DNA of 64,000 bases from IMGVR_UViG_3300028558_000791:62001-126000, one strand, 5' to 3'; positions 15,250-50,447 are shown, numbered from the stretch's first letter. Notes: generated from the letters alone by a model not told the origin. Made by a program: numbers and translations.

Positions 15250-15269
15250 TGAACACAAGGATAAGTAAC

Positions 15270-16229: not shown

Positions 16230-16237
16230 GGTACAAG

Positions 16238-16528: not shown

Positions 16529-16537
16529 GGGGGAATC

Positions 16538-18183: not shown

Positions 18184-18235
18184 AAAAGATTGCAATAAGG
18201 CGCTGCATAGCGGGGTATATGTTAGGTGAAGCCAT

Positions 18236-18309
18236 TCAGGGCTCGTCTAACGGCAGGATCGAGGACTCCGAATCCTCTGATATTGGTTCGAATCCAATGC
18301 CCTGAACCA
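18236..18309 (+). tRNA. tRNA-Arg(CCG)
   Basis: TCAGGGC/GCCCTGA, loop CT-CCG-AA, A73-CCA. Confidence 0.9.
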
Positions 18310-18332
18310 CTTTTTCATTGAGAGATTTGTAA

Positions 18333-18737
18333 ATGAAGTCTATTGGTAAGCTGGTATATAACCCGCGAACCCACCTAGCCTCTTCGGAGCGCTGGTTGGT
18401 ATTGATGTGCGATGATGAAATCTCGCGCTACTATCGTCACTTGTTTACCAAGGACTATCCTTACCTAAATGGTGAGAAGACTGGTAAGCTGACTCGTCCT
18501 GTATGGGGAACCCACGTCTCGATCATTCGAGGTGAGTTCATTCCAAACTTCAAGCTATGGCGAGCCGACGAGAACAAGTTGGTTGAGTTTACCTATGAAG
18601 GTGGCGTTATAGACAATGGTGAATACTATTGGTTAAAGGTTACCTGTCCATATCTTCTAGATTTGCGGGAGAAGTATGGATTGACGCGTGAGCCTCGATT
18701 CGGATTGCACTTAACCATCGGGAGAACTACAGAATGA
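18333..18737 (+). CDS. 2H phosphoesterase-like protein
   Basis: Two Hx(S/T)h motifs: GTHVSII and GLHLTIG, about 65 aa apart. Confidence 0.65.
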   Translation: MKSIGKLVYNPRTHLASSERWLVLMCDDEISRYYRHLFTKDYPYLNGEKTGKLTRPVWGTHVSIIRGEFIPNFKLWRADENKLVEFTYEGGVIDNGEYYWLKVTCPYLLDLREKYGLTREPRFGLHLTIGRTTE

Positions 18738-23773: not shown

Positions 23774-24739
23774 ATGAAAGTTCTTGTATACGGATGGTAT
23801 CATCAAGGCAACATCGGCGATGATCTATTTATGGATGCCTTCTGCTATTTGTTTCCCAATATTAGCTTTGAATTTACAGAGAAAATAACTGCTGACAAGC
23901 TCAAAGATATAGATGCCGTTTTCTTCGGAGGCGGCTCTTTTCTTTTAGATGCTCCTAACATTAGCAGTGACGCACTTCAGATTATGGCCACTAAGAAAGT
24001 GTTCTATCTAGGCGTAGGCATAGAGACTAACATCCATCCAACACATCAAGCGTTGCTATCTCATGCATCGTTGATTGCAACTCGTTCTTTAGAACAAGTA
24101 GAAAAAATAAAGTCATTCAATCATAACGTTAGATTTGTGCCTGATTTAGTGTATGCTTTGCAACCAAAAATAAAAGAAGCGACTCCGATTGATAAATCTG
24201 TGTTGGTTATGACTAACATATCGGTAGTTCCACATAATGCAGATCCACATTGGAAACATGCCGCTTGGGCATATTTCAAGTCAGAGTTCGGTCAATTTTT
24301 GGACTGGTTGGTAGATTCTGGTTACAAGCCACAATTATTTTCAATGTGTCAGGGAATTAATTTAGATGATAGTTGGGCCTCGGCTGAGCTGGTTAATTCT
24401 CTAAGTAAGAGAAGTCGCAATAGACTTATGATGGAAAAACCTACTGGTATTGAACAAGTATCAGAACTTATCTCCAGACATGAAATGCTTATTACCCAGC
24501 GATTTCATGGCATTGTTCTGGCCGAGATGACCAGGACGCCATACATAGCCATTCACCATCATGACAAGTTGAAGTTCAGTCAACCAAACGAAGGAACCTT
24601 CCTTTCCTACTATAATAGTTCCAAGTTGTCCTACATAAGTGCCTTTGAGAAAACAATAAAGATGAATTTCTCTGACACTCTGCCAATAGAATCAAATATC
24701 TTCAAGACTCTTGTTGAAGAGGTCGGGAGTCTTTTATGA
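23774..24739 (+). CDS. Polysaccharide pyruvyl transferase family protein
   Basis: GWYHQGNIGDD, FFGGGSFL, LGVGI, PDLV, RFHGIVLA. Confidence 0.85.
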   Translation: MKVLVYGWYHQGNIGDDLFMDAFCYLFPNISFEFTEKITADKLKDIDAVFFGGGSFLLDAPNISSDALQIMATKKVFYLGVGIETNIHPTHQALLSHASLIATRSLEQVEKIKSFNHNVRFVPDLVYALQPKIKEATPIDKSVLVMTNISVVPHNADPHWKHAAWAYFKSEFGQFLDWLVDSGYKPQLFSMCQGINLDDSWASAELVNSLSKRSRNRLMMEKPTGIEQVSELISRHEMLITQRFHGIVLAEMTRTPYIAIHHHDKLKFSQPNEGTFLSYYNSSKLSYISAFEKTIKMNFSDTLPIESNIFKTLVEEVGSLL

Positions 24740-24751
24740 TGGTTGGTATAA

Positions 24752-26032
24752 ATGGCACGCTATATCGGAGTGAAGAACAATCGCATCTGCGTAGTATCGG
24801 ACAATTTATTCAATAATGCCGGGCTGGATGTAATCGAAATCCCACCTGAGTTGTCCCATGTGTCTCCTGCCGATTTATTAACCACCTGCGTTGTTATCAA
24901 TGGAAAGATAAAATGCAAGTGTTCCAAGAAACCAACTAATGAAATACGATTAGCATTAGTAGGTAATTGGAAAATGAGATGTGGAATTGCCACATACTCA
25001 GAAAACCTTTGGCCAGAAGTCGCTAAACATGTTGGCGATTTTAAACTTTTCATAGAGAAGAATGATATTACAACTGGTGATGTACATCAGTTTGGAGATC
25101 AAACATTATCAGAGGACCAAGTTGTTGCCTGCTGGAAGCGTGGCGAATCTTTGCAGCCCCTGATTCAAGAACTCAAAGATTTTGATCCAGACATCATTTG
25201 GATTCAACATGAGTTTGGTTTGTGGCCTAACGCCAGTTACTGGTTGTCCATGATGAGCCAATTGGGCGACTATCGTGTCATTGTAACCATGCATTCTGTT
25301 TTCCATCACAAAGATAAAACAATTGTCGAAGCAGCTATGCCAGAAATTGTAACTCATTTGGAAGGTGGACGAGTTCTTCTCAAAGAAGAGAAGGGTCTCA
25401 GTTCTAAAGTATACGTCATCCCACACGGCTGCTACAAGTTCGACAACCAGCGTTTGTGGAATTTCTACAAGTCCGACAAAACGTTTATGCAGTTTGGCTT
25501 CGGCTTCCGCTACAAGGGCTGGGAGAATTCTATAAGAGCCACTGCGATTCTTAAAGAGAAGTATCCTGACGTTTTCTTCACCGGGCTGTTCTCCGAATCG
25601 CCATACGCCAAGCTTGACCACCAAATCTATTACAACGAACTAATGAGTTTGGTTAGTGAGTTGGGTATTCAAGAGAACGTTGCAATTATACGTGGCTATC
25701 AGTCTGATGAAGTGTTGGATAGTTTCTTGCGTACCAACCAAGCAACTATCTTCCCATACGTCTCCCATCCACAGCACGAAGTGTTCGGGGCATCTGGAGC
25801 TGCACGCATGGCAATGTCCAGAGGATTACCAGTAGTTACATCTTCCGTCAACCATTTCTCTGATTTACCAACTATGAAGGCTGATACTCCTGAAGATATT
25901 GCTGCTGCCCTAGAAATTCTTTTCACAGTACCAAGTGCTAGAGAAAAGCAATTGCAATCTCAAATGGCCTATCTCAATGAAAACACTTGGGAAAATATCG
26001 GTTTACGTTACGCCCAGATATTCGGCGAATGA
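24752..26032 (+). CDS. GT-B glycosyltransferase (GT4-like) with N-terminal extension
   Basis: CGIATYS, WIQHEFG, VTMH, VIPHG, FGFGFRYKGWE, ASGAARMAMSRGLPVVTS. Confidence 0.85.
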   Translation: MARYIGVKNNRICVVSDNLFNNAGLDVIEIPPELSHVSPADLLTTCVVINGKIKCKCSKKPTNEIRLALVGNWKMRCGIATYSENLWPEVAKHVGDFKLFIEKNDITTGDVHQFGDQTLSEDQVVACWKRGESLQPLIQELKDFDPDIIWIQHEFGLWPNASYWLSMMSQLGDYRVIVTMHSVFHHKDKTIVEAAMPEIVTHLEGGRVLLKEEKGLSSKVYVIPHGCYKFDNQRLWNFYKSDKTFMQFGFGFRYKGWENSIRATAILKEKYPDVFFTGLFSESPYAKLDHQIYYNELMSLVSELGIQENVAIIRGYQSDEVLDSFLRTNQATIFPYVSHPQHEVFGASGAARMAMSRGLPVVTSSVNHFSDLPTMKADTPEDIAAALEILFTVPSAREKQLQSQMAYLNENTWENIGLRYAQIFGE

Positions 26033-26074
26033 AATTAACGATAAAAAACGATATGATCTATGAAATTAACGATA
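26029..26074 (+). repeat. 15-bp direct repeat with 31-bp period
   Basis: ATGAAATTAACGATA at 26029-26043 and 26060-26074, with a partial AACGATA between. Confidence 0.8.
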
Positions 26075-26111
26075 TATAGGTGATTGACATCAATTAACCC
26101 GAGGAGAAAGC

Positions 26112-27077
26112 ATGTCAAACCCTAATTACACCTTAGAAATTATCAGCCACCACCCTAAATTCAATAACAAATCGTTGCGCAAATACTATGTGGATGGAAT
26201 TGAAACAGTAGGAGCTTGGGGCGATGAGCCCTTTGAGATCCGTTTCAAGAACAACACCTGGCAAAAAGTTCAGGTAAAGATCACACTCGATGGAACTGAT
26301 GTTCTAACTGGTAAGCCAGGTGACACTCAGGTCTCCAAAGACATGTGGGTCGTCAATGGTTACGGAACCCTATCACTCAAGGCTTGGCCAGAAACTAACA
26401 ATGGCGGAGCCGCTTTCGTTTTTACCGGCGCTGAAAAGAGCGTTGCAGTTCATACTCATGGAGACTTATCTAGCCGTGGTATCATCGCTGCCGCTGTCTT
26501 CACTGAAGGCCATGTAGAGCCAATTACATATGCACCAGCAGTATATCACCATCATCACTATGATAACATCAGACGTTGTAAGGGAATGGGTGGAGGATAC
26601 TACGGCGGTGGTACCATTATTGGTGGAGGAATCACTTATACTGCTGGCAACACTGGCAGCCTCGGCGGAACTCTGTCTTCCAATACAATCAGCCTAAATA
26701 ATGCTAGCGCGTCCTCAGCCTCTGCTAATTACTTTAGTGATGCAAGAGAGATTAGTGATAGTGATGGATTAAGTGAGGGAGCAGCTTCGTTTGACACTCT
26801 AGTATCAGTAGGTGCTGGAGAGCATGTTGATCAGAAGATCAGTTATGTAACCGGGCTAATCAAGCCTCTCTTTACTGAGACTGTTAGGGTCAAGTATCTA
26901 TGGTGGGATGATTTGACTGCCAAGCTACGTACTGAGACTCATGCTAGACCACAGCCTTCTGGATTTCCAGGTGACGATGAACGAAAGAACATTGACCTGA
27001 AATGTACTCCAAGAGTTGGAGGGAAGCAAGGATCATTTCGTCGAGTAGAACAACCACAAGTGTTTGATCGATTCTAA
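26112..27077 (+). CDS. Uncharacterised protein with beta-rich N-terminal domain and Gly/Ser-rich linker
   Basis: FEIRFKN...ITLDGTDVLTG...GIIAAAVFTE; low-complexity middle; GAGGAG SD. Confidence 0.8.
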   Translation: MSNPNYTLEIISHHPKFNNKSLRKYYVDGIETVGAWGDEPFEIRFKNNTWQKVQVKITLDGTDVLTGKPGDTQVSKDMWVVNGYGTLSLKAWPETNNGGAAFVFTGAEKSVAVHTHGDLSSRGIIAAAVFTEGHVEPITYAPAVYHHHHYDNIRRCKGMGGGYYGGGTIIGGGITYTAGNTGSLGGTLSSNTISLNNASASSASANYFSDAREISDSDGLSEGAASFDTLVSVGAGEHVDQKISYVTGLIKPLFTETVRVKYLWWDDLTAKLRTETHARPQPSGFPGDDERKNIDLKCTPRVGGKQGSFRRVEQPQVFDRF

Positions 27078-27310: not shown

Positions 27311-27335
27311 TAGGCATAACGATATATATGTTTAT

Positions 27336-27382
27336 GAACCCAGTGAGGGTTCTTGACAATTAGATACACGGAGAGTGTTATT
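27336..27382 (+). promoter_or_regulatory. Two-hairpin leader element, copy 1 (before nadM-Nudix)
   Basis: GAACCC-AGTGA-GGGTTC ... ACAC-GGAGA-GTGT, then ATG. Confidence 0.65.
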
Positions 27383-28390
27383 ATGGAACAATATCAGTAT
27401 TGCGTCGTTGTTGGGCGTTTCGAGCCATTTCATCTTGCACATCATGAGCTTATTCGAGAAGCTCTGAGTTTGGCAAAGACTGCATTAGTCATTATTGGGA
27501 GCGCCCACAAGGCCCGCACCATTCAAAATCCTTGGACCGCTGTTGAGCGAGAAGCAATGATTGTTGCCGCCCTCACAGAAGAGGAAAGGGCACGAGTCAA
27601 ATTCTTCCATGTTCGCGACTACTTCTACACCAACAACCGTTGGTTGAGTGAAGTTCAGCAGCTTATTGCTGAGGCAACTGATGGAATTGAAGATGACCAG
27701 ATTTGCAACATTGGTGAGCCTGTAAACGACTTCTACTTCCCTCAGTGGAAGTATTTCAAGATGCGCAACCTAGATAGGATGCCGCATGCAACGAAGGTTC
27801 GTGATTTGTATTTCACTCACGATGCTGCATATAAGACCCATCTGGACGCTCCAGTTGCGGAAATCTTAGAAAACTTCAAAACGACTCTTGCCTTCAAGAC
27901 TTTGAAGGATGAGTATGATCATATCCGAAACTACCGCTCTTCCTGGGATGGTGCTCCCTTTCCTCCAACTTTTGTTACGATTGACTGCATTGTTATCAAG
28001 AGTGGTCACGTATTGACGGTCCGTCGAAAAGGTAGTCCTGGTCGAGGTTTGATTGCTCTTCCTGGCGGATTCTTGAACCAAAAGGAAACAATCCTTGAAG
28101 GAGCCCTTCGAGAGTTAAAGGAAGAGACTGGTATCAAGGTTTCCAAAGAGGAGCTTGAGAAGTCTATTATTGAGCAGAAAGTGTTCGACTACCCAGAGCG
28201 CTCTCTACGAGGCCGCACAATTACACATGCCTTCCTAATCAATCTAGGTCAAGGCCCACTTCCTGTCGTCAAAGGAATGGATGATGCCGACAAGGCATGG
28301 TGGATGTCACTAAGTGATTTGGCAACTAGGGAATCGGAATTCTTCGAAGACCACTTCCACATCATCACACACTTCATCAACAAATTCTAA
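27383..28390 (+). CDS. nadM: Bifunctional NMN adenylyltransferase / ADP-ribose pyrophosphatase (NadM-Nudix, NatV-like)
   Basis: VVGRFEPFHLAH, GSAH...NPWT, Nudix box ALPGGFLNQKETILEGALRELKEETG. Confidence 0.93.
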   Translation: MEQYQYCVVVGRFEPFHLAHHELIREALSLAKTALVIIGSAHKARTIQNPWTAVEREAMIVAALTEEERARVKFFHVRDYFYTNNRWLSEVQQLIAEATDGIEDDQICNIGEPVNDFYFPQWKYFKMRNLDRMPHATKVRDLYFTHDAAYKTHLDAPVAEILENFKTTLAFKTLKDEYDHIRNYRSSWDGAPFPPTFVTIDCIVIKSGHVLTVRRKGSPGRGLIALPGGFLNQKETILEGALRELKEETGIKVSKEELEKSIIEQKVFDYPERSLRGRTITHAFLINLGQGPLPVVKGMDDADKAWWMSLSDLATRESEFFEDHFHIITHFINKF

Positions 28391-28393
28391 GAA

Positions 28394-28437
28394 AAGTTCC
28401 CAGTGAGGGGATTTCAAATTAATACGGAGAGTATATC
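28394..28437 (+). promoter_or_regulatory. Two-hairpin leader element, copy 2 (before NAMPT)
   Basis: AAGTTCCC-AGTGA-GGGGATTT ... ATAC-GGAGA-GTAT, then ATG. Confidence 0.65.
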
Positions 28438-29841
28438 ATGAATTACGAAGCAGAGAATTTTCTCATCGATACGGATAGTTACAAGGCCAGCCATTACCTT
28501 CAATATCCTGAAGGAACAACGAGTATGTTTAGCTACATCGAATCTCGTGGTGGTGATTACAAGAAGACGGTGTTCTTCGGCCTACAATACTACGTCAAGA
28601 AGTACCTTACTCACAGAGTGACTGTGGAAGAGGTTGAAGAGGCCAAGGAGTTCTTCGAAGCACACGGAGAGCCATTCAACTACGAAGGTTGGATGTATAT
28701 CGCTAAGGAACTTGGTGGTAAGTTGCCGGTTCGTATTCGAGCCGTTCCCGAGGGTAGCGTTGTTCCTACTCACAATATCTTAGTCAGTATCGAATCTACT
28801 GATCCCAAAGTCTTTTGGGTGGTATCCTGGATCGAAACAATGCTACTTAGGGTCTGGTATCCTATCAACGTTGCAACCAGGAGTCACAAAATTAGACAGA
28901 TCATCTCAGAAGCCTTGAGAATCTCGGCAGATGATCCGCAGGCAGAAATCAATTTCAAGCTGCACGATTTCGGAAGCAGAGGCGTTTCGTCTCAGGAATC
29001 GGCAATGATTGGTGGAGCCGCTCATTTGGTTAACTTCATGGGTTCCGATACTGTCGTTGGTGTGCGATGCGCCAACAAATTCTACAACTCTAAGATGGCT
29101 GGTTTCAGTATCCCTGCCATGGAGCACAGCTCAGTTACCTCTTGGGGCAGAGAGCACGAAGCTGATGCCTACCGCAACATGCTTCAGAAGACTGGAAAAC
29201 CGGGCGGATTAGTTGCTTGTGTAAGCGACTCTTACGATCTGTGGAATGCCTGTTCTAACCTGTGGGGCAAAGAACTGAAGGATGAAGTGATCAAGTCGGG
29301 AGCTACTGTAGTTATCCGTCCTGACTCTGGAGATCCTTCCAGTGTTGTCCTCCGCACTGCACAATTGCTTGAAGAAAAGTTTGGAGTTACTGTCAATAGC
29401 AAAGGCTTCAAGGTTCTCAACAATGTACGCATTATCCAGGGAGACGGTATCAATGAAGACTCAATTCAAGAGATCCTTAACAATTTGCTGGATCATACTT
29501 ACAGCGCCAGCAATATTGCTTTTGGTATGGGCGGCGCTCTGCTACAGCAACATAATCGCGATACACTGAAGTTCGCCATGAAGTGTAGCCACATCTATCG
29601 TACGGTAGATGGTAAGGAAGTTTCAGTGGATGTCTTCAAGGATCCTGTTACTGACCACGGTAAAGTTAGTAAGGCTGGCCGTTTGGATTTGATTCGTGAC
29701 ATGTCTGGCAATTGGTCCACTGTCACTCTTGGAGACAAAGATCATCACCTGTTGACGGTGATGGATCTTGTCTATGAGAATGGTGAGGTTCTCAAGGAAT
29801 ATACGTTTGACGAAATTAGAAACCGTGCGAAGGGAGTGTAA
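28438..29841 (+). CDS. nadV: Nicotinamide phosphoribosyltransferase (NAMPT)
   Basis: DTDSYKASH, LHDFGSRG, IPAMEHS, VSDSYD, IRPDSGD, IIQGDG, FGMGGALLQ. Confidence 0.95.
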   Translation: MNYEAENFLIDTDSYKASHYLQYPEGTTSMFSYIESRGGDYKKTVFFGLQYYVKKYLTHRVTVEEVEEAKEFFEAHGEPFNYEGWMYIAKELGGKLPVRIRAVPEGSVVPTHNILVSIESTDPKVFWVVSWIETMLLRVWYPINVATRSHKIRQIISEALRISADDPQAEINFKLHDFGSRGVSSQESAMIGGAAHLVNFMGSDTVVGVRCANKFYNSKMAGFSIPAMEHSSVTSWGREHEADAYRNMLQKTGKPGGLVACVSDSYDLWNACSNLWGKELKDEVIKSGATVVIRPDSGDPSSVVLRTAQLLEEKFGVTVNSKGFKVLNNVRIIQGDGINEDSIQEILNNLLDHTYSASNIAFGMGGALLQQHNRDTLKFAMKCSHIYRTVDGKEVSVDVFKDPVTDHGKVSKAGRLDLIRDMSGNWSTVTLGDKDHHLLTVMDLVYENGEVLKEYTFDEIRNRAKGV

Positions 29842-29842
29842 C

Positions 29843-30742
29843 ATGATTAAAGACTATCTAAAAACTGCAATTCATATCGAAACTTGGATCAAAAATTACG
29901 CTGCCAAAGCAGGTGTTTCTACATTAGTTCTGGGCCTTTCTGGCGGAATTGACTCTGCTGTCTGTGCCTTACTCATCAAACGAACTGGAATTCCTTTGGT
30001 GTGTGTTAACATGCCATGTCATAGTTCCTCTTCTGCTTATGACCGTGCTAAGGCATTTGCTGATGAGAATGACATTAAGCTGATGAAGGTTGATTTGTCA
30101 GCGGCCCATGCAGTCATTGCTGATCAACTAACTGTCCAGGCACCATTTGATTGGCAAAGCAAAGGTTCTGCTGGCGGACTTCGTTCTTGCCTCAGAGCAC
30201 CAACTCTATCCTATGTTGCTCATGCCACCAACGGAATCATCGTTGGTACTGGCAATCGTAGTGAAGACCGTATCACCCGTTACTTTCAGAAGTTTGGTGA
30301 TGGTTGCGTAGACTTCTCACCAATTGCTGACTTGTGGAAGTCGGAAGTGTATGCCCTGTTCAAGTTCCTTGCTGAGGAAAACAATGGTGTCATGGGTCCT
30401 GGTGCACAGGCTATCTATGATGCTAAGCCAAGTGCTGACCTTTGGGGAGCTGATTCTGGTCAAGAAGATGAGAAAGAGCTTGGCATCTCCTATGATGAGA
30501 TTGAGTGGGCTGATCGTGAAGATGTTGACTCACAAGGTGAAGGTGCTTGGGGTCAGCCTATGCCAGGAATTATCTTCCTAGATTCTCACCCCGAGGAACA
30601 TGAACGTTGGGGCTCCTATACTCCACGTCAGCAAGAAGTCATTAAGACCCTTCATCGTATGGAGAAGACCTCTCGTCATAAGGCTAATCCAGCTATGCCA
30701 GTCTGTAATGTGCATGACCCTAAACTTGAACTTTGCGAGTAA
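29843..30742 (+). CDS. nadE: NH3-dependent NAD synthetase
   Basis: LVLGLSGGIDSAV, GTGNRSE, YFQKFGDG, PIADLWKSEV, PSADLW. Confidence 0.9.
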   Translation: MIKDYLKTAIHIETWIKNYAAKAGVSTLVLGLSGGIDSAVCALLIKRTGIPLVCVNMPCHSSSSAYDRAKAFADENDIKLMKVDLSAAHAVIADQLTVQAPFDWQSKGSAGGLRSCLRAPTLSYVAHATNGIIVGTGNRSEDRITRYFQKFGDGCVDFSPIADLWKSEVYALFKFLAEENNGVMGPGAQAIYDAKPSADLWGADSGQEDEKELGISYDEIEWADREDVDSQGEGAWGQPMPGIIFLDSHPEEHERWGSYTPRQQEVIKTLHRMEKTSRHKANPAMPVCNVHDPKLELCE

Positions 30743-30745
30743 ACC

Positions 30746-31021
30746 ATGAAAGTTCTTAAAAGACCCAATACCGAATGGTCGATGAAACATACCTGTACTC
30801 ATTGTACTGCCGAATTGGAAGTGGAGAAAAGTGATGTGAAATTCACTAGTCATCCCGGCGACTTCCGAGATCCGGGATATGAAACCTGGTCAGCCACTTG
30901 TCCGGTTTGCTCCAATACTTTCAATATCAAGGAATCGACGCTTCCAAAGATTGTTCAAATTGAAATCAAAAAGCGCCAACCTGATAATGGGCCGTATGGT
31001 GGTGGATATTACGATCGCTAA
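30746..31021 (+). CDS. Zn-ribbon protein, paralog 1
   Basis: MKVL...CTHC...GDFRDPGY...CPVC...LPKIVQ. Confidence 0.75.
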   Translation: MKVLKRPNTEWSMKHTCTHCTAELEVEKSDVKFTSHPGDFRDPGYETWSATCPVCSNTFNIKESTLPKIVQIEIKKRQPDNGPYGGGYYDR

Positions 31022-31425: not shown

Positions 31426-31677
31426 ATGAAAGTCCTCCAATATAGTATTGATCCTAAAGTGTGGACCCATGCAATCACTTGTGATTGGTGTAAGTCTCAA
31501 ATTGAAATCAGTGCCGATGATTTGTCTCACGAAGGTGAGAGAGGCGATTATGTGGATCCGGGCTGGGACCGTTATACATGTGATTGTGGCGCTTGTGGTC
31601 ATGAGATAGAAGTTCCTGAGAAGCAGCTTCCTAACATCATTCAATCCTACGCAAGGAAACGAAAAAAGAAACGATGA
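31426..31677 (+). CDS. Zn-ribbon protein, paralog 2
   Basis: MKVL...CDWC...GDYVDPGW...CGAC...LPNIIQ. Confidence 0.75.
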   Translation: MKVLQYSIDPKVWTHAITCDWCKSQIEISADDLSHEGERGDYVDPGWDRYTCDCGACGHEIEVPEKQLPNIIQSYARKRKKKR

Positions 31678-32240
31678 TCTATGCTGTAAGTTTCAAGCAT
31701 ACCATCCCCGAAGGTTCTTTATCTATGGACGTTACCTCCAGGTCTAATACCTGGGGAAGGCACTTCAGTCCATTCAATCTAGGGCCAGTGGACCTGTATG
31801 ATGGATATGTGGCCAAGAACATTGAGAATGCTTTTCAGTTCTCTAGGGTTTATCCCGAGTACTCTACTGTGGACGGTGTACCGTCGGAACACTATTGGGA
31901 GTGGGCAAAGATTGGTTGGGCCGAATCTAAGCCTATCAAATATCCTATGGGTGTTTGGAATAAGCATTTGTATCATTGGTGGGATGGTAAGAAGCTAGGA
32001 ATGTTAGAAGCTCAGAATCAAATATTCTTACCATTGTATAAGAAGGCCGTCATCAAAACCCCAGCCTTTGAGAAGCTAAAGTATTTTTACGAAAACTCAA
32101 AGCAAGACATTTACCTGATCGATTTCGAAGGTTATAATCATCGATACCTGGAAAAAACCTGGGATCAGGTGATCAGCGATCCTGATAGACCTGTAGGCCA
32201 AGCTTTTGCTCTTTGTATGATATTAGAGGGATTTCTATGA
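31674..32240 (+). CDS. Hypothetical protein, possibly NADAR-related
   Basis: FSPFNLGP...NIENAFQFSRVY resembles the NADAR E-x-x-(Y/F)-Q-x-x-K core. Confidence 0.7.
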   Translation: MIYAVSFKHTIPEGSLSMDVTSRSNTWGRHFSPFNLGPVDLYDGYVAKNIENAFQFSRVYPEYSTVDGVPSEHYWEWAKIGWAESKPIKYPMGVWNKHLYHWWDGKKLGMLEAQNQIFLPLYKKAVIKTPAFEKLKYFYENSKQDIYLIDFEGYNHRYLEKTWDQVISDPDRPVGQAFALCMILEGFL

Positions 32241-32540: not shown

Positions 32541-32813
32541 ATGATAAGTATTGACGAAGAGATTCAAAGAATAATTCACTTCTTGAGCCAAGGAATCGAT
32601 TATACGCTCACTATAGGGATTCTTAGTATTACCCCGATCTGTTCAGATGAGGCTTGCTGGGTGGTGAGTTGGCAAGAACAGATTGATGATACTATTCTAG
32701 AATGCCAGAAGGATTTTATATCCTTGTTCGATGCTGCACAGTATTTTGTCGAGAAAAGACGCTATATGTGCATTGGATCTGATTTTGATACATTGGAGAA
32801 TGATAATGAGTAG
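32541..32813 (+). CDS. Hypothetical protein
   Basis: 90-aa ORF. Confidence 0.65.
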   Translation: MISIDEEIQRIIHFLSQGIDYTLTIGILSITPICSDEACWVVSWQEQIDDTILECQKDFISLFDAAQYFVEKRRYMCIGSDFDTLENDNE

Positions 32814-33723
32814 CGTATTACTTGGTACTGCAATTGGTGATGCCTTGGGTGTTCCATTTGAAACTAAACTTGCTAACTATGAGTTGTTGGTTGCTTGGGA
32901 TGGTGAAACCTATTTAGGTAGCGAGCATCACGGCCTCAAACCTGGACAATACTCTGATGATACTCAGATGAGTCTGATGGTTGCCGAATCTCTTATCGAG
33001 AACCATGGATTCAATCCCGATGACTTAGCCGAACGCTATGTTGAATGGATTACATCTGGCAGGGCTAGAGGTTATGGTAAAACAACCCTATTAGCCATTC
33101 AAAATTTGGTCAATGGTAAACACTGGAGCGAATCTGGTATTGCTGGTTCCTATGGAAATGGAACCGCTATGCGAGCTGCTCCATTTGGAGTTTACTTCCG
33201 CAATGATTTACAGTCCCTAATCAGTATTTGTAAGATGGATAGTTCTATCACCCACGCTTCTGATGAGGCTGAAGCCGGTTCTATTGCTATTGGGTATGCA
33301 GCAGCCTATGCGGTCAATGGCGAGAAGGAAGGGTTACTAGATGAATTGTGGCGAATTCTGCCGGACAGCAAGGTAAAAAGTATCATTTACAGCCTTGACT
33401 CCTTGATTGATTCGCCTTACATTACACCGGAACAAGCGCTCCGTGTGATTGGAACTAAGGCAGATGTTCGACAGACTGCTCCAGCCGCATTGTATTGTTT
33501 CCTAAAGTTTGAGACCTATGCAGAGGCAATACAAGCCGCCATTAGAGCTGGTGGAGATACAGATACCACGGCTGCCATTGTAGGAGCTTTGTTTGCTGCC
33601 AGAGATGGTACGTTGAATATCTCTGATGCTTGGATTAGTGGTGTAGAGGAATCTAGTAGGCTCATGGAGCTAGATAGTCAACTTTACAACCGATCAAACG
33701 ATTCGTTTCTGAAAAGAGGATAA
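32806..33723 (+). CDS. ADP-ribosylglycohydrolase (ARH3/DraG family), copy 2
   Basis: GTAIGDALG, YSDDTQM, GNGTAMRAAP, GGDTDTTAAIVGAL. Confidence 0.92.
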   Translation: MSSVLLGTAIGDALGVPFETKLANYELLVAWDGETYLGSEHHGLKPGQYSDDTQMSLMVAESLIENHGFNPDDLAERYVEWITSGRARGYGKTTLLAIQNLVNGKHWSESGIAGSYGNGTAMRAAPFGVYFRNDLQSLISICKMDSSITHASDEAEAGSIAIGYAAAYAVNGEKEGLLDELWRILPDSKVKSIIYSLDSLIDSPYITPEQALRVIGTKADVRQTAPAALYCFLKFETYAEAIQAAIRAGGDTDTTAAIVGALFAARDGTLNISDAWISGVEESSRLMELDSQLYNRSNDSFLKRG

Positions 33724-36305: not shown

Positions 36306-37553
36306 ATGACTCGCTATAAAATGGTTGCCAGGGATTTCAACTCTAATCCCACACAATATCGTACTTGGGTAGTTCAGGACCAACCTGATTTTGATGGCTA
36401 TTACTATGCTGGCTATAAATCAGGACCAAATGACTTTACCGAGGTTAGTGCTTATGCCATCAATGATGGGTACGCTATCGTAGACTTCAATCTACCAGAC
36501 CCTACTTCATGGGTAGCTACTACTGATCATTTGGGTTGGGACTATCCAATTCGTAAGGTTATGCCATTCCCCGTAGAAGATGCTGCCCTAGCAGTTCTCG
36601 ACGGTTACATCTATACATTCGGGGGCAAAATTACCGATAAGATTTTCCGTGCTTCAGTAGAGAATCCTGCTGACTGGTTTGATACTGGCGCTAGATTACC
36701 TAATACTCTATATGGTGCAGCTATGGCAATTGTCGATGGCTACATCTATCTATTTGGCGGAAACACTGGAACTAATTTTGGACTTGGAACGGTAGATAAT
36801 ATCTACTCCGCCCCAGTTAGTAATCCGCTTTTTTGGACTGATCATGGTCCTGGATTGCTCCCCCGCAAAATAGACTATTCGGGAATCGGTATGGACGGAT
36901 ATAATCTGTACATATTTGGTGGTAGAGAAACTAACATTGCTTCCGATATCATCTTTACGGCCTCAACATCTAATCCATTGGTATGGACTGATACTGGCGC
37001 TAAACTACCTTACAAGGTTTATGGTGCCATATTTGCAGAAGTCAATAATAATTGGATGTTATTTGGAGGGCAGCTTACTCCAGATACCCCAACTAATACC
37101 ATTATCTCTGCGCCAGTTGGTTCTCCACTCGTTTGGCATCTAACTGGTTTATTACCATGGTCATGTTCTTTTGGACAGTTTGTCAATATCGGTGGTGATG
37201 GTTATATCTTTGGACCGATGAGCGGAGTAACAACTACTTTTACTTCTATTTTGAGATGTAATCTGACGGACCCAAATGCTTGGGTAGATACTCAGAGAAT
37301 TATACGTGGCGTCATATCTCATTCACAGTCAGCAATTGTGGCTGATAGGGTATGGTTATTTGGCGGTAGCGGGCTGACTGCTATTTTTGCTTGTAATCAG
37401 GTTTTGAAGTATGTACCTTCATATCCTAAAGCTGCTAACTATGGAAACATAACTCGTACAGTTGTTCCTAATACAGACAACATAAACAGTCCGTACCAGG
37501 CATTATGTATACCGTGGTGGCGAACTGATTATCCATTCCACAATCGACCGTAA
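36306..37553 (+). CDS. Kelch-like beta-propeller protein
   Basis: Repeated (I/L)Y-x-FGG ... W-x-DTGA-x-LP units. Confidence 0.82.
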   Translation: MTRYKMVARDFNSNPTQYRTWVVQDQPDFDGYYYAGYKSGPNDFTEVSAYAINDGYAIVDFNLPDPTSWVATTDHLGWDYPIRKVMPFPVEDAALAVLDGYIYTFGGKITDKIFRASVENPADWFDTGARLPNTLYGAAMAIVDGYIYLFGGNTGTNFGLGTVDNIYSAPVSNPLFWTDHGPGLLPRKIDYSGIGMDGYNLYIFGGRETNIASDIIFTASTSNPLVWTDTGAKLPYKVYGAIFAEVNNNWMLFGGQLTPDTPTNTIISAPVGSPLVWHLTGLLPWSCSFGQFVNIGGDGYIFGPMSGVTTTFTSILRCNLTDPNAWVDTQRIIRGVISHSQSAIVADRVWLFGGSGLTAIFACNQVLKYVPSYPKAANYGNITRTVVPNTDNINSPYQALCIPWWRTDYPFHNRP

Positions 37554-39054: not shown

Positions 39055-39704
39055 AACAACCCTTCATTATCAAAGAAGTACGACCTCGCATTTTTCTATT
39101 TGAGTTCAGTAATCATTACGATATGTGTATGCATTTCTTGCGCTATCAAGAATTCTACGAATCACCTTCTCCTAAGTTTAGGGGTAAGAGTTTTCGTATT
39201 CTAGATTTCATGAAGTGGTACACTTTCAAATATGGAAACGGTTCTTTCACTTATCCAAATGATTGGAATGGGTTTAATATACCTGGTGATACTATTAACA
39301 AAGTTTGTCAATTGGGCCTGCCCGATCAAAATCCCTATGATAAAGAGATGTTGTTGGCCTGGAACAAATGCAATAGTAAAGCTAATGGAGAGCCATTTTA
39401 CATTATCGGGGTAGTCCGTGGTAACAAAGCCTTGAACCATGAGATTGCTCACGGGTTATTCTACCTAAATAAGGAATACAAAAAAGAAACTGTGAGGCTG
39501 GTTAAAGAACTGCCGACCTCTATTAGAAAAACCATCAATGATGGTTTAAAGAAGCTTGGATATACTCCAAAGGTCTACGTTGACGAAACGCAAGCCTATA
39601 TGTCTACTGGTTTGTCAGAGGCTTTTGGTAAGGTAGATCAATGGAAAGGTGAGCGTGCCGATTTTGAGGCGTGCTTTAAAAAGTTTTCAAGGAAAGTAAA
39701 ATGA
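39051..39704 (+). CDS. Hypothetical protein with HExxH (possible zincin)
   Basis: LNHEIAHGLFY ... DETQAY. Confidence 0.65.
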   Translation: MKQPFIIKEVRPRIFLFEFSNHYDMCMHFLRYQEFYESPSPKFRGKSFRILDFMKWYTFKYGNGSFTYPNDWNGFNIPGDTINKVCQLGLPDQNPYDKEMLLAWNKCNSKANGEPFYIIGVVRGNKALNHEIAHGLFYLNKEYKKETVRLVKELPTSIRKTINDGLKKLGYTPKVYVDETQAYMSTGLSEAFGKVDQWKGERADFEACFKKFSRKVK

Positions 39705-40594
39705 GTAACGATAGCCTTGGCGATAGGATGAAGTCCTATGAAGATGTTTTTAGACTTCATTTGCCGATTAGAATGCCGGTCATCATGCGTATTGACGGCA
39801 AAGCGTTTCATTCTTATGTAAAAGGTAAGGGTGTAGATGGAAAAGAAGTCGATAAGCCTTTTGATAAGGGACTGTTTGATTGTATGAACGATACTGCCAT
39901 TGCACTTTGTAAAGAAGTGCAAGGTTGTCGTTTGGCTTATGTCCAATCTGACGAGATTTCTCTTCTGTTAACTAACTACAGCACAGTAGATACTCAATCC
40001 TGGTTTGATAACAACCTTCTAAAAATGGTTAGCATCTCTGCATCTGTAGCTTCTGTTACTTTTACCGAGAACTCTTACAAGATTTGGGGAATAGATTACT
40101 CCAACGAGGATCCTTTCTATCTCACCAAGCCAGCTCATTTTGATAGTCGAGCTTTTGTAATGCCAAAGGAAGATGTAACAAACTATTTCTTGTGGCGTCA
40201 GCAGGATGCTACTCGAAACTCTGTGCAGATGCTGGCTCGTTCCCTGTATTCCCACAAGGAATTGGAAAACAAGAACAACTCAGAGCTTCAAGAGATGTGT
40301 TTCCAAAAAGGTGCCAACTGGAATGACGTTCCTACTGCTCAGAAACGTGGTCGTTGTATTGTTAAAAAGGTTACTCAACATACCGCCTTCAACCCTAAGA
40401 CAAAAGAATATGTCAAATCTGAGCGTAGTGCCTGGGTAGTTGATGACGAAATCCCTATTTTCTCTGTGGATAGAGAGTACGTTGATCGATTTGTTTACCC
40501 TGAAAGAGAGAATGATTATGTCCCAGGAAAAGGTAGAGTGTATAACGTCTCTTATGGACATCCCGGTATTAGGACTTTAGGTGAAGGCGACTAA
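39701..40594 (+). CDS. thg1: Thg1-like 3'-5' nucleotidyltransferase (tRNA-His guanylyltransferase family)
   Basis: GDRMKSYE, MRIDGKAFH, YVQSDEISL, FDSRAF, YFLWRQQDATRNS. Confidence 0.93.
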   Translation: MSNDSLGDRMKSYEDVFRLHLPIRMPVIMRIDGKAFHSYVKGKGVDGKEVDKPFDKGLFDCMNDTAIALCKEVQGCRLAYVQSDEISLLLTNYSTVDTQSWFDNNLLKMVSISASVASVTFTENSYKIWGIDYSNEDPFYLTKPAHFDSRAFVMPKEDVTNYFLWRQQDATRNSVQMLARSLYSHKELENKNNSELQEMCFQKGANWNDVPTAQKRGRCIVKKVTQHTAFNPKTKEYVKSERSAWVVDDEIPIFSVDREYVDRFVYPERENDYVPGKGRVYNVSYGHPGIRTLGEGD

Positions 40595-43742: not shown

Positions 43743-45628
<1,886 letters not shown>

Positions 45629-45629
<1 letters not shown>

Positions 45630-48950: not shown

Positions 48951-50447
48951 ATGAGTCTGCCTGTCATTAAGGACCAGTCCGTCATTGATAACATCAAAGT
49001 TGTGGAATCCGTCAAGCGATGGACACTTAACTTTACCGACATTGTCAATAACAACAATAAGTTTTACAACCTGGAAGTTGTTAAGTCATCTGACGACAAA
49101 TTCTATCTGTACACCGTTTACGGTCGAGTTGGTGCCGGTGGCGCCAAAGAGTACAGGTCAGCATCTTCTCTCAACGAAGCAGAGAAGGAAGCCGAAGGCA
49201 TCATCAAGTCCAAGAACAAGAAGGGCTATGTTGAAGTCAAGCTTGCTAAAGCTGACATCGGTTCCGAGCTTGGTAAGGCCAAGGTCGATACCTCTGTGAC
49301 CCTTGAGTCTTTGAAGAAGGCTGGCGTGAAGGTTACAGAAGAGCCTCAAGCTGCCAGCAAACTGCATGTTGAAGTGCAAGACCTTGTTCGCACTTGGTTC
49401 GGCGTTACTCAAGAGTTCCTTGAGTTGAACCTTGACACCAAGAAGTGCCCACTCGGCCAGTTGTCTCTCGATCAAATCGACAAGGCCAAGCAGATTCTTG
49501 AAGAGGCTCGTAATATCGTTCATGCTAAGAAGCCTGACAAGGATGAGTTGAACAAGTTGACGAGTTCCTATTACTCCAACATTCCTCACGTTCTTGGTTC
49601 TCGAATCAATGCGGATTTGCTTCGTTTTGATGATGACCCCAAGATTGACAAAGCGTTTGATATTCTTGACGTCTTTGCTGACGCCAAGAACGTTCAGGCC
49701 GTTATTTCCAAGAAGAGCGCGGTTGATTCGCAATATGCGACTCTGAATGCTGGTTTGGAATACGTTGATCCAAAGGATCCGACCTTCAAGTGGCTTGAGG
49801 CAATGGTTCTTGAAACCCGCGCCAGCAACCACACCGGCTTGGGCAAGCTGAAGATTCATAAGGTCTTCAAGCTGGCTCGTAACAATGAAGACAAATACTT
49901 CATGGAGACAGCCGAAAAGATTGCTAAGGAATGCGGTAAGTTTGTTCCTTCTCCGGTCTATTCTAATTTGGTCAAGAGGCGCCCTGATCTCTCCAAGGAG
50001 ATGCAGGAGCTTTACCAGAGGGCTAACATTCTCCCTGGTTGGCACGGTACTCGCCGTGCAAACATGATTGGTATCACTACCAAGGGACTTTTGATTCGTC
50101 CTTCTGGAGTTATCCATGCGGGTTCTATGTATGGTGACGGTATTTACTGGGCCGTTCATAGTACTAAGTCCATCAATTACTGTGACGTCCGTGGTTCTCA
50201 CTGGGCTCAGGGTAATAACAAGACCGCGTATCTCTTCTTAGGAGACGTGGCTTTTGGTAACCAGGAGATGGCTGGTGGTTCTCGTATGTATACCAAGAAG
50301 AACATCGCGCCTAACCATTCTGTGTGGGCAAAGTCCGGTGGTAACTCTGGATTGTACAATGACGAACTGATTACCTACACCGCTTCTGGTGCGGGTCAGC
50401 AGCACGCCCTTCGCTACATTATCGAATTTGAGACGCAAGCCAAATGA
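48951..50447 (+). CDS. PARP-family ADP-ribosyltransferase (WGR + helical regulatory + catalytic domains)
   Basis: NKFYNLEV...YGRVG; PLGQLSLDQI...YYSNIPH; WHGTRRAN...GSMYGDGIYWA...KSINYC...YNDELITY (H-Y-E). Confidence 0.93.
   Translation: MSLPVIKDQSVIDNIKVVESVKRWTLNFTDIVNNNNKFYNLEVVKSSDDKFYLYTVYGRVGAGGAKEYRSASSLNEAEKEAEGIIKSKNKKGYVEVKLAKADIGSELGKAKVDTSVTLESLKKAGVKVTEEPQAASKLHVEVQDLVRTWFGVTQEFLELNLDTKKCPLGQLSLDQIDKAKQILEEARNIVHAKKPDKDELNKLTSSYYSNIPHVLGSRINADLLRFDDDPKIDKAFDILDVFADAKNVQAVISKKSAVDSQYATLNAGLEYVDPKDPTFKWLEAMVLETRASNHTGLGKLKIHKVFKLARNNEDKYFMETAEKIAKECGKFVPSPVYSNLVKRRPDLSKEMQELYQRANILPGWHGTRRANMIGITTKGLLIRPSGVIHAGSMYGDGIYWAVHSTKSINYCDVRGSHWAQGNNKTAYLFLGDVAFGNQEMAGGSRMYTKKNIAPNHSVWAKSGGNSGLYNDELITYTASGAGQQHALRYIIEFETQAK

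What the first reader, a model, noticed from the sequence alone, without database searches (positions are those of the whole stretch)
27383..30742. NAD reconstitution operon extended with NadE
Seen: NadM-Nudix, NAMPT and NadE are adjacent and co-oriented. Established: NAMPT plus NMNAT is the phage NAD salvage route (Vibrio phage KVP40 NadV/NatV; NARP2) that can offset NAD-depleting defences such as Thoeris, DSR and SIR2 systems. The Nudix domain recycles ADP-ribose to ribose-5-phosphate. Inference: the added NadE provides a second, deamidated entry route (NaAD to NAD, or NaMN to NMN as in Francisella), so the phage could rebuild NAD from both nicotinamide and nicotinate pools. This would supply its own NAD consumers (LigA, PARP).
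Basis: partly seen in the sequence, partly recalled or inferred. Interest (0 to 1): 0.6.

Follow-up and report, generated by a model that had tools for sequence, protein, structure and literature searches.

The report
Huge-phage NAD salvage operon with NadE
A 480-kb uncultured phage carries the known two-enzyme NAD-rebuilding pair (NAMPT plus NadM-Nudix) followed directly by an NAD synthetase (NadE). Together with a NadD-like enzyme elsewhere in the genome, this lets the phage finish NAD synthesis from both amidated and deamidated precursors, an interesting variant of a theme already described in jumbo phages.

Summary
nadM-Nudix (27383-28390), NAMPT (28438-29841) and a single-domain NH3-type NadE (29843-30742) are co-oriented, with gaps of 47 nt and 1 nt. 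A conserved promoter-like element and a 5' hairpin lie upstream. The same order is kept in five related huge-phage contigs (NadE identity 63-82%). More distant relatives (41-61%) carry NadE away from NAMPT/NadM or without them.

NadE keeps every catalytic motif of its family. Its nearest solved relative, by sequence and by fold, is the Francisella NMN synthetase, but the margin is small. Substrate preference (NaAD or NaMN) cannot be read from sequence.

The genome has no PncA, PncB or Prs, so the phage cannot enter from nicotinate on its own. About 66 kb upstream of the operon, outside the window, it encodes a NadD-like NaMN adenylyltransferase fused to a CinA/PncC-like domain whose Ser/Lys dyad is replaced by Thr/Gln. 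That enzyme is the likely NadE partner, giving NaMN to NaAD to NAD.

NadE is already known in jumbo phages (Bacillus phage G, Phosso, "NAD-jumbo phages"). In cyanophages the homologue sits beside UDP-glucose dehydrogenase. I found direct fusion of NadE to a NARP2-type pair only in this clade. Verdict: a new variant of a known kind. Co-expression and anti-defence function were not tested.

The parts
27311..27328 (+). Conserved promoter-like element TAGGCATAACGATATATA, 55 nt upstream of the nadM start codon
   Evidence: It is invariant in five related contigs whose surrounding intergenic DNA has diverged. It occurs once in the window, where 0.14 matches are expected. Related GGCATA-N-GTGATATA motifs occur three more times on the + strand of the genome, two of them clearly in front of tRNA genes, against 0.65 expected in shuffles. 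That it acts as a promoter is inferred.
27336..27352 (+). 5' leader hairpin (stem GAACCC/GGGTTC, loop AGTGA) between the promoter-like element and the ribosome-binding site
   Evidence: RNAalifold on five relatives keeps the stem, with both-sided changes at two of its six pairs. No Rfam family matches it. Its function is unknown.
27383..28390 (+). [quoted passage not shown]
   Evidence: PF01467 plus PF00293. NF003791 at E 3e-119. GRFEPFHLAH motif and a full Nudix box.
28438..29841 (+). NAMPT / NadV nicotinamide phosphoribosyltransferase (467 aa)
   Evidence: PF18127 NAMPT_N at 2e-32 plus PF04095 at 2.5e-57. NF006629 at 639 bits, above its 405 cut-off. It is the only NAPRTase-family gene in the genome.
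29843..30742 (+). nadE: single-domain NH3-dependent NAD synthetase family protein (299 aa), in a clade seen only on phage-like contigs
   Evidence: PF02540 and TIGR00552. Catalytic residues are invariant across 27 homologues. The best PDB match by sequence profile and by fold is 3FIU. No cellular species representative carries a relative with the family motifs.
30746..31021 (+). Small zinc-ribbon protein (91 aa) starting 3 nt after the nadE stop; a paralogue lies at 31426-31677
   Evidence: phrog_2834 at 2.6e-9, and 2.8e-5 for the paralogue. Weak Zn-ribbon Pfam hits. A gene of similar size follows nadE in L002, L097 and L098. Its role is unknown.
31674..32240 (+). DUF6939 protein (188 aa), kept downstream of nadE in relatives
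   Evidence: PF22075 at 5.5e-5, below its cut-off. DUF6939 is called at the same position in L097, L098 and L099. L002 has a NADAR protein there instead, with no detectable sequence similarity to this one.
32731..33723 (+). ADP-ribosylglycohydrolase (330 aa)
   Evidence: PF03747 at 5e-70. It is kept downstream of the operon in L002, L097, L098 and L099.
43755..45629 (+). NAD-dependent DNA ligase LigA (624 aa): consumes NAD and releases NMN
   Evidence: PF01653, PF03120, BRCT and HhH domains. Also present in relatives G001 and G002.
48951..50447 (+). PARP-domain protein (498 aa): a putative NAD consumer
   Evidence: PF00644 at 2e-20 at genome 111785-112336, which is window 49785-50336. phrog_23333.

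Best explanation
The three genes form one transcription unit of a huge phage. The unit joins the NARP2-type amidated salvage route to the last enzyme of the deamidated route.

Amidated route: nicotinamide is converted to NMN by NAMPT and then to NAD by NadM. The Nudix half of NadM turns ADP-ribose into AMP and ribose-5-phosphate.

Deamidated route: NadE most likely acts as a conventional ammonia-dependent NAD synthetase on NaAD. The NaAD would be made from host-derived NaMN by the phage's own NadD-like enzyme (the CinA-like/NadD fusion at genome 22781-23896). A bifunctional NadM or host NadD could also make it.

Net effect (inferred): pyridine nucleotide that the host deamidates is still pulled back to NAD during infection. 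Host PncA acts on nicotinamide, and host PncC acts on NMN made by NAMPT or released by LigA. This keeps LigA, PARP and general metabolism supplied, and it blunts NAD-depleting defences.

Shown: gene identity, intact motifs, spacing, conserved order, the upstream element, and the genome-wide gene inventory. Inferred: co-transcription, the NaAD substrate, the origin of NaMN, and the anti-defence benefit.
For: - Gene identities and spacing.
- NadE catalytic residues are invariant in 27 homologues: S33-G-G-x-D37-S38, E141 in GTGNRSED, D153/D157 in FGDGCVD, K166, the (S/T)-A-D199-L motif and the C-terminal R278-H279-K280.
- The AlphaFold model has pLDDT 85.9, and all its top fold hits are NadE enzymes.
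- The order nadM-NAMPT-nadE, followed by DUF6939 or NADAR and then ARH, is kept in L002, G001/L012, L097, L098 and L099 at 63-82% NadE identity. The nadM upstream element is invariant in the four of these aligned; L098 was not included.
- A NadD-like domain is present in the same genome. It carries the GxxNPPHEGH, PPHK and ISSTELR motifs. The eight best PDB sequence hits are all NadD, and Foldseek finds NadD for the C-terminal half and CinA/PncC for the N-terminal half.
- The fusion is conserved in 381 homologues, many on contigs of hundreds of kb. It co-occurs with NadE in G000 and G001. It also appears to co-occur on the 491,629-bp and 490,849-bp contigs, judged by matching contig lengths.
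- The genome has no PncA, PncB, Prs or PnuC.
- NadM enzymes can be bifunctional for NMN and NaMN and work with a conventional NAD synthetase in Acinetobacter (PMC3376133).
- Phage clusters that combine NadE with NaMN-forming and adenylylating enzymes already exist: phage G pncB-nadD-nadE and the Phosso cluster (PMC11662467).
Against:
- Promoter-like and terminator-like consensus hits in the region are no more frequent than in shuffled sequence.
- The nearest solved homologue is the Francisella NMN synthetase, not a NaAD-specific enzyme.
- One complete relative, G002, has NadE, NadM and NAMPT but no NadD-like gene. The NadD partnership is therefore not universal.
- NadE scores below the full-length equivalog cut-offs: NF010587 at 134 bits against 255.
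- The closest homologues in cultured phages sit in sugar-modification clusters rather than NAD clusters.
- The host is unknown, so its PncA, PncB, PncC and NadD status is unknown.
Confidence: 0.55

Rival explanations
1. Francisella-type route: NadE is an NMN synthetase that amidates NaMN to NMN, and NadM then adenylylates the NMN. Both NAMPT and NadE would then feed the same NMN pool upstream of NadM, with no need for any NadD.
For: 3FIU (Francisella NMN synthetase) is the best PDB match by single sequence (78 bits), by family profile (110.7 bits, against 99.9 and 94.6 for the next two and 65 for B. subtilis) and by fold (E 1e-14, target TM-score 0.85). NadE lies in one operon with NadM. The complete relative G002 has NadE, NadM and NAMPT but no NadD-like gene. 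PMC3376133 states that replacement of NadD by NadM in Francisella goes with NMN-synthetase specialisation of NadE.
Against: The margins over ordinary short-form NAD synthetases (P. horikoshii, C. jejuni, H. pylori) are small. The same paper reports that the archaeal M. jannaschii NadE is NaAD-specific. This genome does encode a NadD-like enzyme. At the two positions I could map, the phage enzyme has Ala23 and His127, where FtNadE has Tyr27 and Gln133 and the Bacillus enzyme has Thr and Gly. It therefore resembles neither (alignment; the role of these positions is my recollection of Sorci et al. 2009, which is not in the held library).
Confidence: 0.2
2. The NadE-like protein is not an NAD enzyme here. 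It would be a PP-loop amidotransferase acting on another carboxylate, such as a sugar acid or pyruvylated glycan. Its place next to NAMPT would be inherited gene order, with the nadM-NAMPT cassette inserted between a glycan-modification cluster and nadE.
For: In Pelagibacter phage HTVC008M and cyanophage S-SCSM2R the NadE homologue (33-37% identical, closer than any characterised NadE) sits immediately upstream of an annotated UDP-glucose dehydrogenase. In S-SSM7 and P-TIM68 an unannotated gene of the same size holds that position. In all four the pair lies inside glycosyltransferase, epimerase or methyltransferase clusters, and none has NAMPT. The 59%-identical homologue in L100 lies among glycosyltransferases, a methyltransferase and an epimerase. 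In the window, a polysaccharide pyruvyl transferase and a GT1 glycosyltransferase lie 1.3-3.6 kb upstream of nadM, and relatives keep glycosyltransferase genes at that position.
Against: All NadE-family invariants are retained, including the YFxKxGDGxxD block and the C-terminal HK motif. From memory, these contact the pyridine nucleotide in classical enzymes. This genome has no UDP-glucose dehydrogenase. There is a 1-nt gap to NAMPT, and the order is conserved across 63-100% identity. Every structural neighbour is a NAD or NMN synthetase. The cyanophage pairing could equally reflect the NAD demand of the dehydrogenase.
Confidence: 0.12
3. The genes are functional NAD enzymes, but the cluster is a general metabolic booster for a very large, slow-replicating phage with its own LigA, PARP and translation genes. 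It would not be an anti-defence device, and NadE would simply raise total flux.
For: Jumbo phages commonly carry one or more complete NAD pathways together with NAD consumers (PMC11662467). NARP2 overproduces NAD even without a defence system. LigA, PARP and ARH are encoded nearby.
Against: It does not exclude the best explanation, since the same enzymes would serve both ends. NARP2 has been shown experimentally to overcome Thoeris, DSR and SIR2-HerA.
Confidence: 0.13

Closest known systems
NARP2 (Vibrio phage KVP40 NadV/Nampt plus NatV/Nmnat-Nudix; Osterman et al., bioRxiv 10.1101/2024.02.11.579819)
   Same: Adjacent NAMPT and a bifunctional NMNAT-Nudix with intact nucleotidyltransferase and Nudix motifs, and the same chemistry: nicotinamide plus PRPP gives NMN, then NAD.
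   Different: NARP2 is defined as two genes, and that paper does not mention NadE or any deamidated intermediate. Here NadE follows NAMPT with a 1-nt gap. The gene order is nadM first. The operon lies in a 480-kb phage that also has a NadD-like enzyme.
Preiss-Handler clusters of jumbo phages (Bacillus phage G gp277 pncB / gp281 nadD / gp283 nadE; 'Kuafu_71' pncB-nadD-nadE, PMC11662467; Sinorhizobium phage Phosso NadE-NAPRTase-MutT-NMNAT)
   Same: A phage-encoded NadE clustered with other NAD-synthesis genes in genomes of 470-500 kb.
   Different: Those clusters contain a nicotinate phosphoribosyltransferase. This genome has none. It pairs NadE with NAMPT and NadM, and its NadD-like gene lies about 66 kb from the operon, fused to a CinA-like domain.
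Francisella tularensis NadE* (NMN synthetase, PDB 3FIU) with NadM
   Same: A short single-domain NadE that co-occurs with NadM. It is the best sequence and fold match.
   Different: Only about 25% identical. The phage enzyme has a C-terminal insertion of about 40 residues and its own invariant Cys/His positions. The mapped specificity positions differ. A NadD-like gene is present, whereas Francisella lacks NadD.
Bacterial pyridine nucleotide cycle PncC-NadD-NadE (recycling of NMN released by LigA)
   Same: The phage has LigA, a CinA/PncC-fold domain, a NadD-like domain and NadE.
   Different: The phage CinA-like domain has Thr19 and Gln51 in place of the catalytic Ser and Lys. The corresponding S31A and K63A mutants of AtCinA are inactive (PMC5384747). 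It keeps the phosphate-binding Ser and Tyr. It may therefore bind the mononucleotide rather than deamidate it.
NadE homologues of cyanophages and pelagiphage (S-SSM7, S-SCSM2R, P-TIM68, HTVC008M)
   Same: They are the closest homologues among cultured phages (33-37% identity) and share the same family invariants.
   Different: They lie next to UDP-glucose dehydrogenase (annotated in two of the four) in glycan clusters, and those genomes have no NAMPT. They also lack most of the C-terminal insertion.

Membership tests
NH3-dependent NAD synthetase (NadE, PF02540 / TIGR00552) | PP-loop ATP-pyrophosphatase motif SGGxDS | tested here: met
   S33-G-G-I-D37-S38 is invariant in 27 homologues and aligns to the P-loop of 3FIU and other NadE structures.
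NH3-dependent NAD synthetase (NadE, PF02540 / TIGR00552) | Conserved catalytic and substrate block (GTxxxxE, xFxKxGDGxxD, K, xADL, C-terminal HK) | tested here: met
   E141, K150, D153, D157, K166, D199, H279 and K280 are invariant in A1. E141, K150, D153, D157, K166, H279 and K280 are also shared with E. coli NadE in A5.
NH3-dependent NAD synthetase (NadE, PF02540 / TIGR00552) | Score above curated family cut-offs | tested here: inconclusive
   TIGR00552 (domain equivalog) scores 138.7 bits against a 63.65 cut-off, which is met. The full-length equivalogs NF010587 (134 against 255) and NF001979 (80 against 250) are not met.
NH3-dependent NAD synthetase (NadE, PF02540 / TIGR00552) | Single synthetase domain without a nitrilase-type glutaminase domain | tested here: met
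   The protein is 299 aa with only PF02540-type matches. The model is a single NadE fold.
NH3-dependent NAD synthetase (NadE, PF02540 / TIGR00552) | Amidation of NaAD to NAD | not testable with these tools
   This needs an enzyme assay.
NMN synthetase (Francisella NadE*) | Genome context: NadM present and NadD absent | tested here: not met
   NadM is present, but a NadD-like domain is also encoded at G000:C1:22781-23896. The host's complement is unknown.
NMN synthetase (Francisella NadE*) | Residues that fill the AMP pocket of NaAD (Tyr27, Gln133, Arg236 of FtNadE; recalled from Sorci 2009, paper not held) | tested here: inconclusive
   The profile alignment to 3FIU puts Ala23 at Tyr27 and His127 (Asn in distant members) at Gln133. 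Arg236 could not be mapped.
NARP2 (Nampt + Nmnat) | Phage genome encodes a KVP40-type Nampt together with an Nmnat | tested here: met
   NAMPT_N plus NAPRTase, with an adjacent NMNAT-Nudix.
NARP2 (Nampt + Nmnat) | Restores NAD and overcomes NAD-depleting defence systems | not testable with these tools
   This needs infection assays.
Phage Preiss-Handler cluster (pncB-nadD-nadE) | Nicotinate phosphoribosyltransferase encoded by the phage | tested here: not met
   The only NAPRTase-family gene in 480 kb is the NAMPT. There is no isochorismatase-type nicotinamidase either.
NMN deamidase PncC (for the N-terminal domain of the NadD-like fusion) | CinA/PncC fold | tested here: met
   Foldseek hits 6MR3, 2A9S, 5VU3, 6L19, 5V01, 5KOL and 5KVK, with target TM-scores of 0.38-0.57 (0.52-0.57 for all but 6MR3). 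PF02464 scores 1.5e-4, below its cut-off.
NMN deamidase PncC (for the N-terminal domain of the NadD-like fusion) | Ser/Lys catalytic dyad (S29/K61 in E. coli, S31/K63 in AtCinA) | tested here: not met
   hhalign to E. coli PncC aligns invariant Thr19 and Gln51 at these positions, while the phosphate binders Ser36 and Tyr46 are kept (the hhalign probability is only 41%). The S31A and K63A mutants are inactive (PMC5384747).
NaMN adenylyltransferase NadD (for the C-terminal domain of the fusion) | GxFxPxHxGH, PPHK and ISSTxxR motifs, and the NadD fold | tested here: met
   GAYNPPHEGH, PPHK and ISSTELR are conserved in 25 homologues. The eight best PDB profile hits are NadD. Foldseek finds 3DV2, 1KAQ and 5DEO. 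The curated NadD cut-offs are not reached.

The most novel reading that the evidence does not exclude
This huge-phage clade may carry a self-contained four-activity NAD reconstitution system that goes beyond NARP2. NAMPT and NadM-Nudix would rebuild NAD from nicotinamide. A phage-specific NadE and a CinA-like/NadD fusion would recapture whatever the host deamidates: NMN turned into NaMN by PncC, and nicotinamide turned into nicotinate by PncA. The CinA-like domain has lost the Ser/Lys dyad and may act as a mononucleotide-capturing module. NAD restoration would then be robust against host deamidases. Alternatively, NadE may act as an NMN synthetase, giving the first Francisella-type route in a virus.
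Probability: 0.25. Interest if true: 0.65.

Novelty: new variant of a known kind. Interest (0 to 1): 0.45.

Why it matters
NAD depletion is a common end-point of bacterial antiphage defence. The three named phage counter-pathways (NARP1, NARP2, NARP3) all work with amidated intermediates.

A phage-encoded NadE welded to a NARP2-type pair, backed by a phage NadD-like enzyme, suggests that some phages also secure the deamidated branch. That would matter in hosts whose PncA or PncC quickly deamidate nicotinamide or NMN.

It also yields three testable reagents:
- a phage-specific NadE clade whose substrate preference is undecided;
- a conserved CinA-like/NadD fusion with an altered active site;
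- a conserved leader element upstream of the operon.

Against this, NAD-synthesis clusters that include nadE are already described in jumbo phages, so the conceptual step is modest.

Tried and rejected
- Megablast of the operon against 50,697 phage records found nothing. The clade is absent from the reference phage collection.
- The IMG/VR scans gave only five related loci. It was of no use for the synteny survey.
- The genome-contig scan found no cellular relative with the family motifs. I therefore built no tree with named organisms, and the host remains unknown.
- Whole-record searches of the ENA and JGI contigs behind L002, L004 and L006 were not possible because those records are not held. 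Co-occurrence of NadE and the fusion there rests only on matching contig lengths.
No read mapping was done, so co-expression is untested.
- Sorci et al. 2009 (PMC2651253) is not held, and no held paper names the FtNadE specificity mutants. The specificity-residue argument therefore rests on memory and is marked as such.
- Sigma-70 promoter and intrinsic-terminator scans were no better than shuffled sequence. The TTGACA at 27353 is too close to the start codon to serve as a promoter.
- Rfam found no family in the nadM leader.
- The exact 18-nt upstream element is not a repeated genome-wide motif: it has one exact copy in the genome.
- The window's DUF6939 protein shows no detectable similarity to the NADAR protein at the same position in L002. 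I do not call it NADAR.
- I considered whether the phage might carry PncA, PncB, Prs or PnuC elsewhere in the genome, and UDP-glucose dehydrogenase as a partner for the amidotransferase rival. All were searched for and none was found.
- The costly exhaustive protein search and complex prediction were not used, because no claim here depends on them.

Full report
**What is there.** The window is bases 62001-126000 of a 480,838-bp IMG/VR virus record. IMG/VR flags it as a provirus, and CheckV rates it 100% complete. It is a huge phage. The window alone holds 25 tRNA genes, an EF-G, a PheRS-like protein, Thg1 and LigA.

- nadM-Nudix, 27383-28390. It has CTP_transf_like and NUDIX domains and matches NF003791 at E 3e-119. 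The GRFEPFHLAH motif and a full Nudix box are present.
- NAMPT, 28438-29841. It has NAMPT_N and NAPRTase domains and scores 639 bits on NF006629.
- nadE, 29843-30742. It matches PF02540 at 9e-38 and TIGR00552 at 139 bits against a cut-off of 64. It has no glutaminase domain.

The gaps are 47 nt and 1 nt. The nadE ATG follows the NAMPT TAA and an AAGGGAG ribosome-binding site.

**Operon evidence.** Generic sigma-70 and terminator scans are uninformative here. However, aligning the region upstream of nadM from the window and four relatives shows an invariant 18-nt element, TAGGCATAACGATATATA (27311-27328), within otherwise diverged DNA. It is followed by a hairpin (27336-27352) whose stem is kept through both-sided changes.

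The 18-mer is unique in the window and has one exact copy in the genome. Related GGCATA-N-GTGATATA motifs occur three more times on the + strand, two of them clearly in front of tRNA genes. I therefore read the element as a promoter-like site. No Rfam family matches the leader. Co-transcription of the three genes is thus likely but inferred.

**Conservation.** NadE has a large family of 53-89% identical homologues, many on contigs of 100-500 kb. No cellular species representative carries a relative with the family's signature motifs.

| Locus | NadE identity | Context |
|---|---|---|
| L002 | 82% | nadM-NAMPT-nadE kept |
| G001/L012 | 77% | kept |
| L097 | 72% | kept |
| L098 | 70% | kept |
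| L099 | 63% | kept |
| G002/L004 | 61% | nadE about 25 kb from an adjacent nadM-NAMPT pair |
| L100 | 59% | nadE among glycosyltransferases |
| L006 | 57% | nadE beside a helicase |
| G004 | 45% | NAMPT about 11 kb away |
| G005 (424 kb, complete) | 41% | no NAMPT, NadM or LigA |

In the loci that keep the order, small ORFs are sometimes inserted between the genes. DUF6939 or NADAR and an ADP-ribosylglycohydrolase lie downstream. The junction of nadE with the NARP2-type pair is therefore a feature of one sub-clade. NadE itself is distributed more widely in this group of phages.

**What NadE is.** All residues that define the family are invariant across 27 homologues, and most are shared with E. 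coli NadE. The AlphaFold model has pLDDT 85.9 and finds only NAD or NMN synthetases.

By single sequence, by family profile and by fold, the top solved relative is 3FIU, the Francisella NMN synthetase. It is followed closely by the short-form enzymes of C. jejuni, P. horikoshii and H. pylori. The archaeal M. jannaschii NadE was shown to be NaAD-specific (PMC3376133), so this placement does not settle the substrate.

At the two FtNadE positions that I recall as specificity determinants, the phage enzyme has Ala23 and His127. These resemble neither Francisella (Tyr, Gln) nor Bacillus (Thr, Gly). This uses the alignment, and the source paper is not held.

**Genome-wide inventory changes the picture.**
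- The 480-kb genome has no nicotinamidase, no second phosphoribosyltransferase, no PRPP synthetase and no PnuC. The phage cannot itself convert nicotinate to NaMN.
- It does encode a 371-aa protein at G000:C1:22781-23896, outside the window and about 66 kb upstream of the operon.
- The C-terminal half of that protein is NadD-like. It carries GAYNPPHEGH, PPHK and ISSTELR motifs. The eight best PDB profile hits are all NadD, and Foldseek finds 3DV2, 1KAQ and 5DEO.
- The N-terminal half has the CinA/PncC fold.
- Aligned to E. coli PncC, the catalytic Ser29 and Lys61 are replaced by invariant Thr19 and Gln51, while the phosphate-binding Ser and Tyr are kept. The corresponding AtCinA mutants S31A and K63A are inactive (PMC5384747).
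- The fusion has 381 homologues, many on contigs of hundreds of kb. It sits in a conserved Nudix-x-x-fusion neighbourhood and matches no PHROG family.
- It co-occurs with NadE in G000 and G001, but not in G002.

**Mechanism proposed.**
- NAMPT and NadM rebuild NAD from nicotinamide, which is the NARP2 chemistry.
- The Nudix half of NadM cleaves ADP-ribose.
- NadE completes the deamidated branch. It most probably acts on NaAD made from host NaMN by the phage NadD-like enzyme. A bifunctional NadM, as in Acinetobacter, or host NadD could also supply NaAD.

The benefit I infer is recapture of pyridine nucleotide that host PncA or PncC deamidate. That includes NMN made by NAMPT or released by the phage LigA.

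The main rival is a Francisella-type NaMN-to-NMN step feeding NadM. A second rival arises from an unexpected finding. In HTVC008M and S-SCSM2R the closest cultured-phage NadE homologues sit next to an annotated UDP-glucose dehydrogenase; in S-SSM7 and P-TIM68 an unannotated gene of the same size holds that place. All four lie inside glycan clusters, without NAMPT. A sugar-acid amidotransferase role is therefore conceivable for part of the wider family. For this gene the rival is weakened by the absence of a dehydrogenase in the genome, the retained NadE invariants and the tight link to NAMPT.

**Comparison with what is known.**
- NARP2 is defined as Nampt plus Nmnat, and NadE is not mentioned.
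- NARP3 is PnuC plus NadR.
- NadE in jumbo phages is not new. Bacillus phage G has pncB-nadD-nadE. Sinorhizobium phage Phosso has a NadE-NAPRTase-MutT-NMNAT cluster. A 2024 survey describes "NAD-jumbo phages" with Preiss-Handler clusters, some with two pathways (PMC11662467).
- Among seven reference phage records with a NadE homologue, only LR756502 also has NAMPT, and it lies 320 kb away.

The direct nadM-NAMPT-nadE operon, the phage-specific NadE clade and the CinA-like/NadD fusion are therefore a new variant of a known kind, not a new category.

**Verdict.** Novelty and interest are moderate. The substrate of NadE, co-expression and any anti-defence benefit remain to be tested.

Noticed in passing
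G000:C1:22781-23896 (outside the window, about 38 kb before its start; locus L008:1782-2897): A 371-aa fusion of a CinA/PncC-fold domain and a NadD-like adenylyltransferase. Invariant Thr19/Gln51 replace the Ser/Lys catalytic dyad. It has 381 homologues, many on contigs of hundreds of kb, and matches no PHROG family. A stand-alone Nudix gene lies two to four genes upstream, also in relatives L110 and L111.
   Followed up: partly
window 27311-27352: A conserved 18-nt promoter-like element and a leader hairpin with both-sided stem changes lie upstream of nadM. No Rfam family matches. Related GGCATA-N-GTGATATA motifs occur three more times on the genome's + strand, two of them clearly in front of tRNA genes.
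   Followed up: partly
L102-L105 (Pelagibacter phage HTVC008M; cyanophages S-SCSM2R, S-SSM7, P-TIM68): In these four marine phages the 'NAD synthetase' gene is followed directly by a gene of about 380 aa, annotated as UDP-glucose dehydrogenase in HTVC008M and S-SCSM2R. The pair lies inside glycosyltransferase, epimerase or methyltransferase clusters. This hints at a sugar-acid amidation role, or at local NAD supply for the dehydrogenase.
   Followed up: partly
window 29843-30742 (NadE residues C59, H60, H89, C155, H279, C288): The phage NadE clade has its own invariant Cys/His positions (an MPCHSS motif, GDGC, and a C-terminal PxC) and a C-terminal insertion of about 40 residues that is absent from cellular NadE. 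A metal site is possible, but I did not examine the geometry.
   Followed up: no
window 30746-31021 and 31426-31677: Two small paralogous zinc-ribbon proteins (phrog_2834) lie just downstream of nadE. A gene of similar size follows nadE in several relatives.
   Followed up: no
window 23774-27077: A polysaccharide pyruvyl transferase, a GT1/GT4 glycosyltransferase and an unannotated 321-aa protein lie directly upstream of the NAD operon. Relatives keep glycosyltransferase genes at the same position.
   Followed up: no
window 1-18400 and 59100-61900; 5377-7470; 39701-41937: The window has 25 tRNA genes in clusters, an EF-G, a Thg1-like tRNA-His guanylyltransferase and a PheRS-like protein. This is the large translation-related gene load typical of huge phages.
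   Followed up: no
G000:C1:40808-41416 (outside the window): The phage encodes a phosphopantetheine adenylyltransferase (CoaD; TIGR01510 at 185 bits). This suggests that coenzyme A synthesis is also supplemented.
   Followed up: no
whole record G000: IMG/VR labels the 480,838-bp record a provirus, while the NadE cluster's longest contig is 498,445 bp. Relatives are free-standing contigs of 490-503 kb, and one relative has direct terminal repeats. The provirus call may therefore be a trimming artefact.
   Followed up: no
window 36306-37553: A Kelch-repeat beta-propeller protein (415 aa) follows a UvrD-type helicase. The same pair occurs in relative L002.
   Followed up: no
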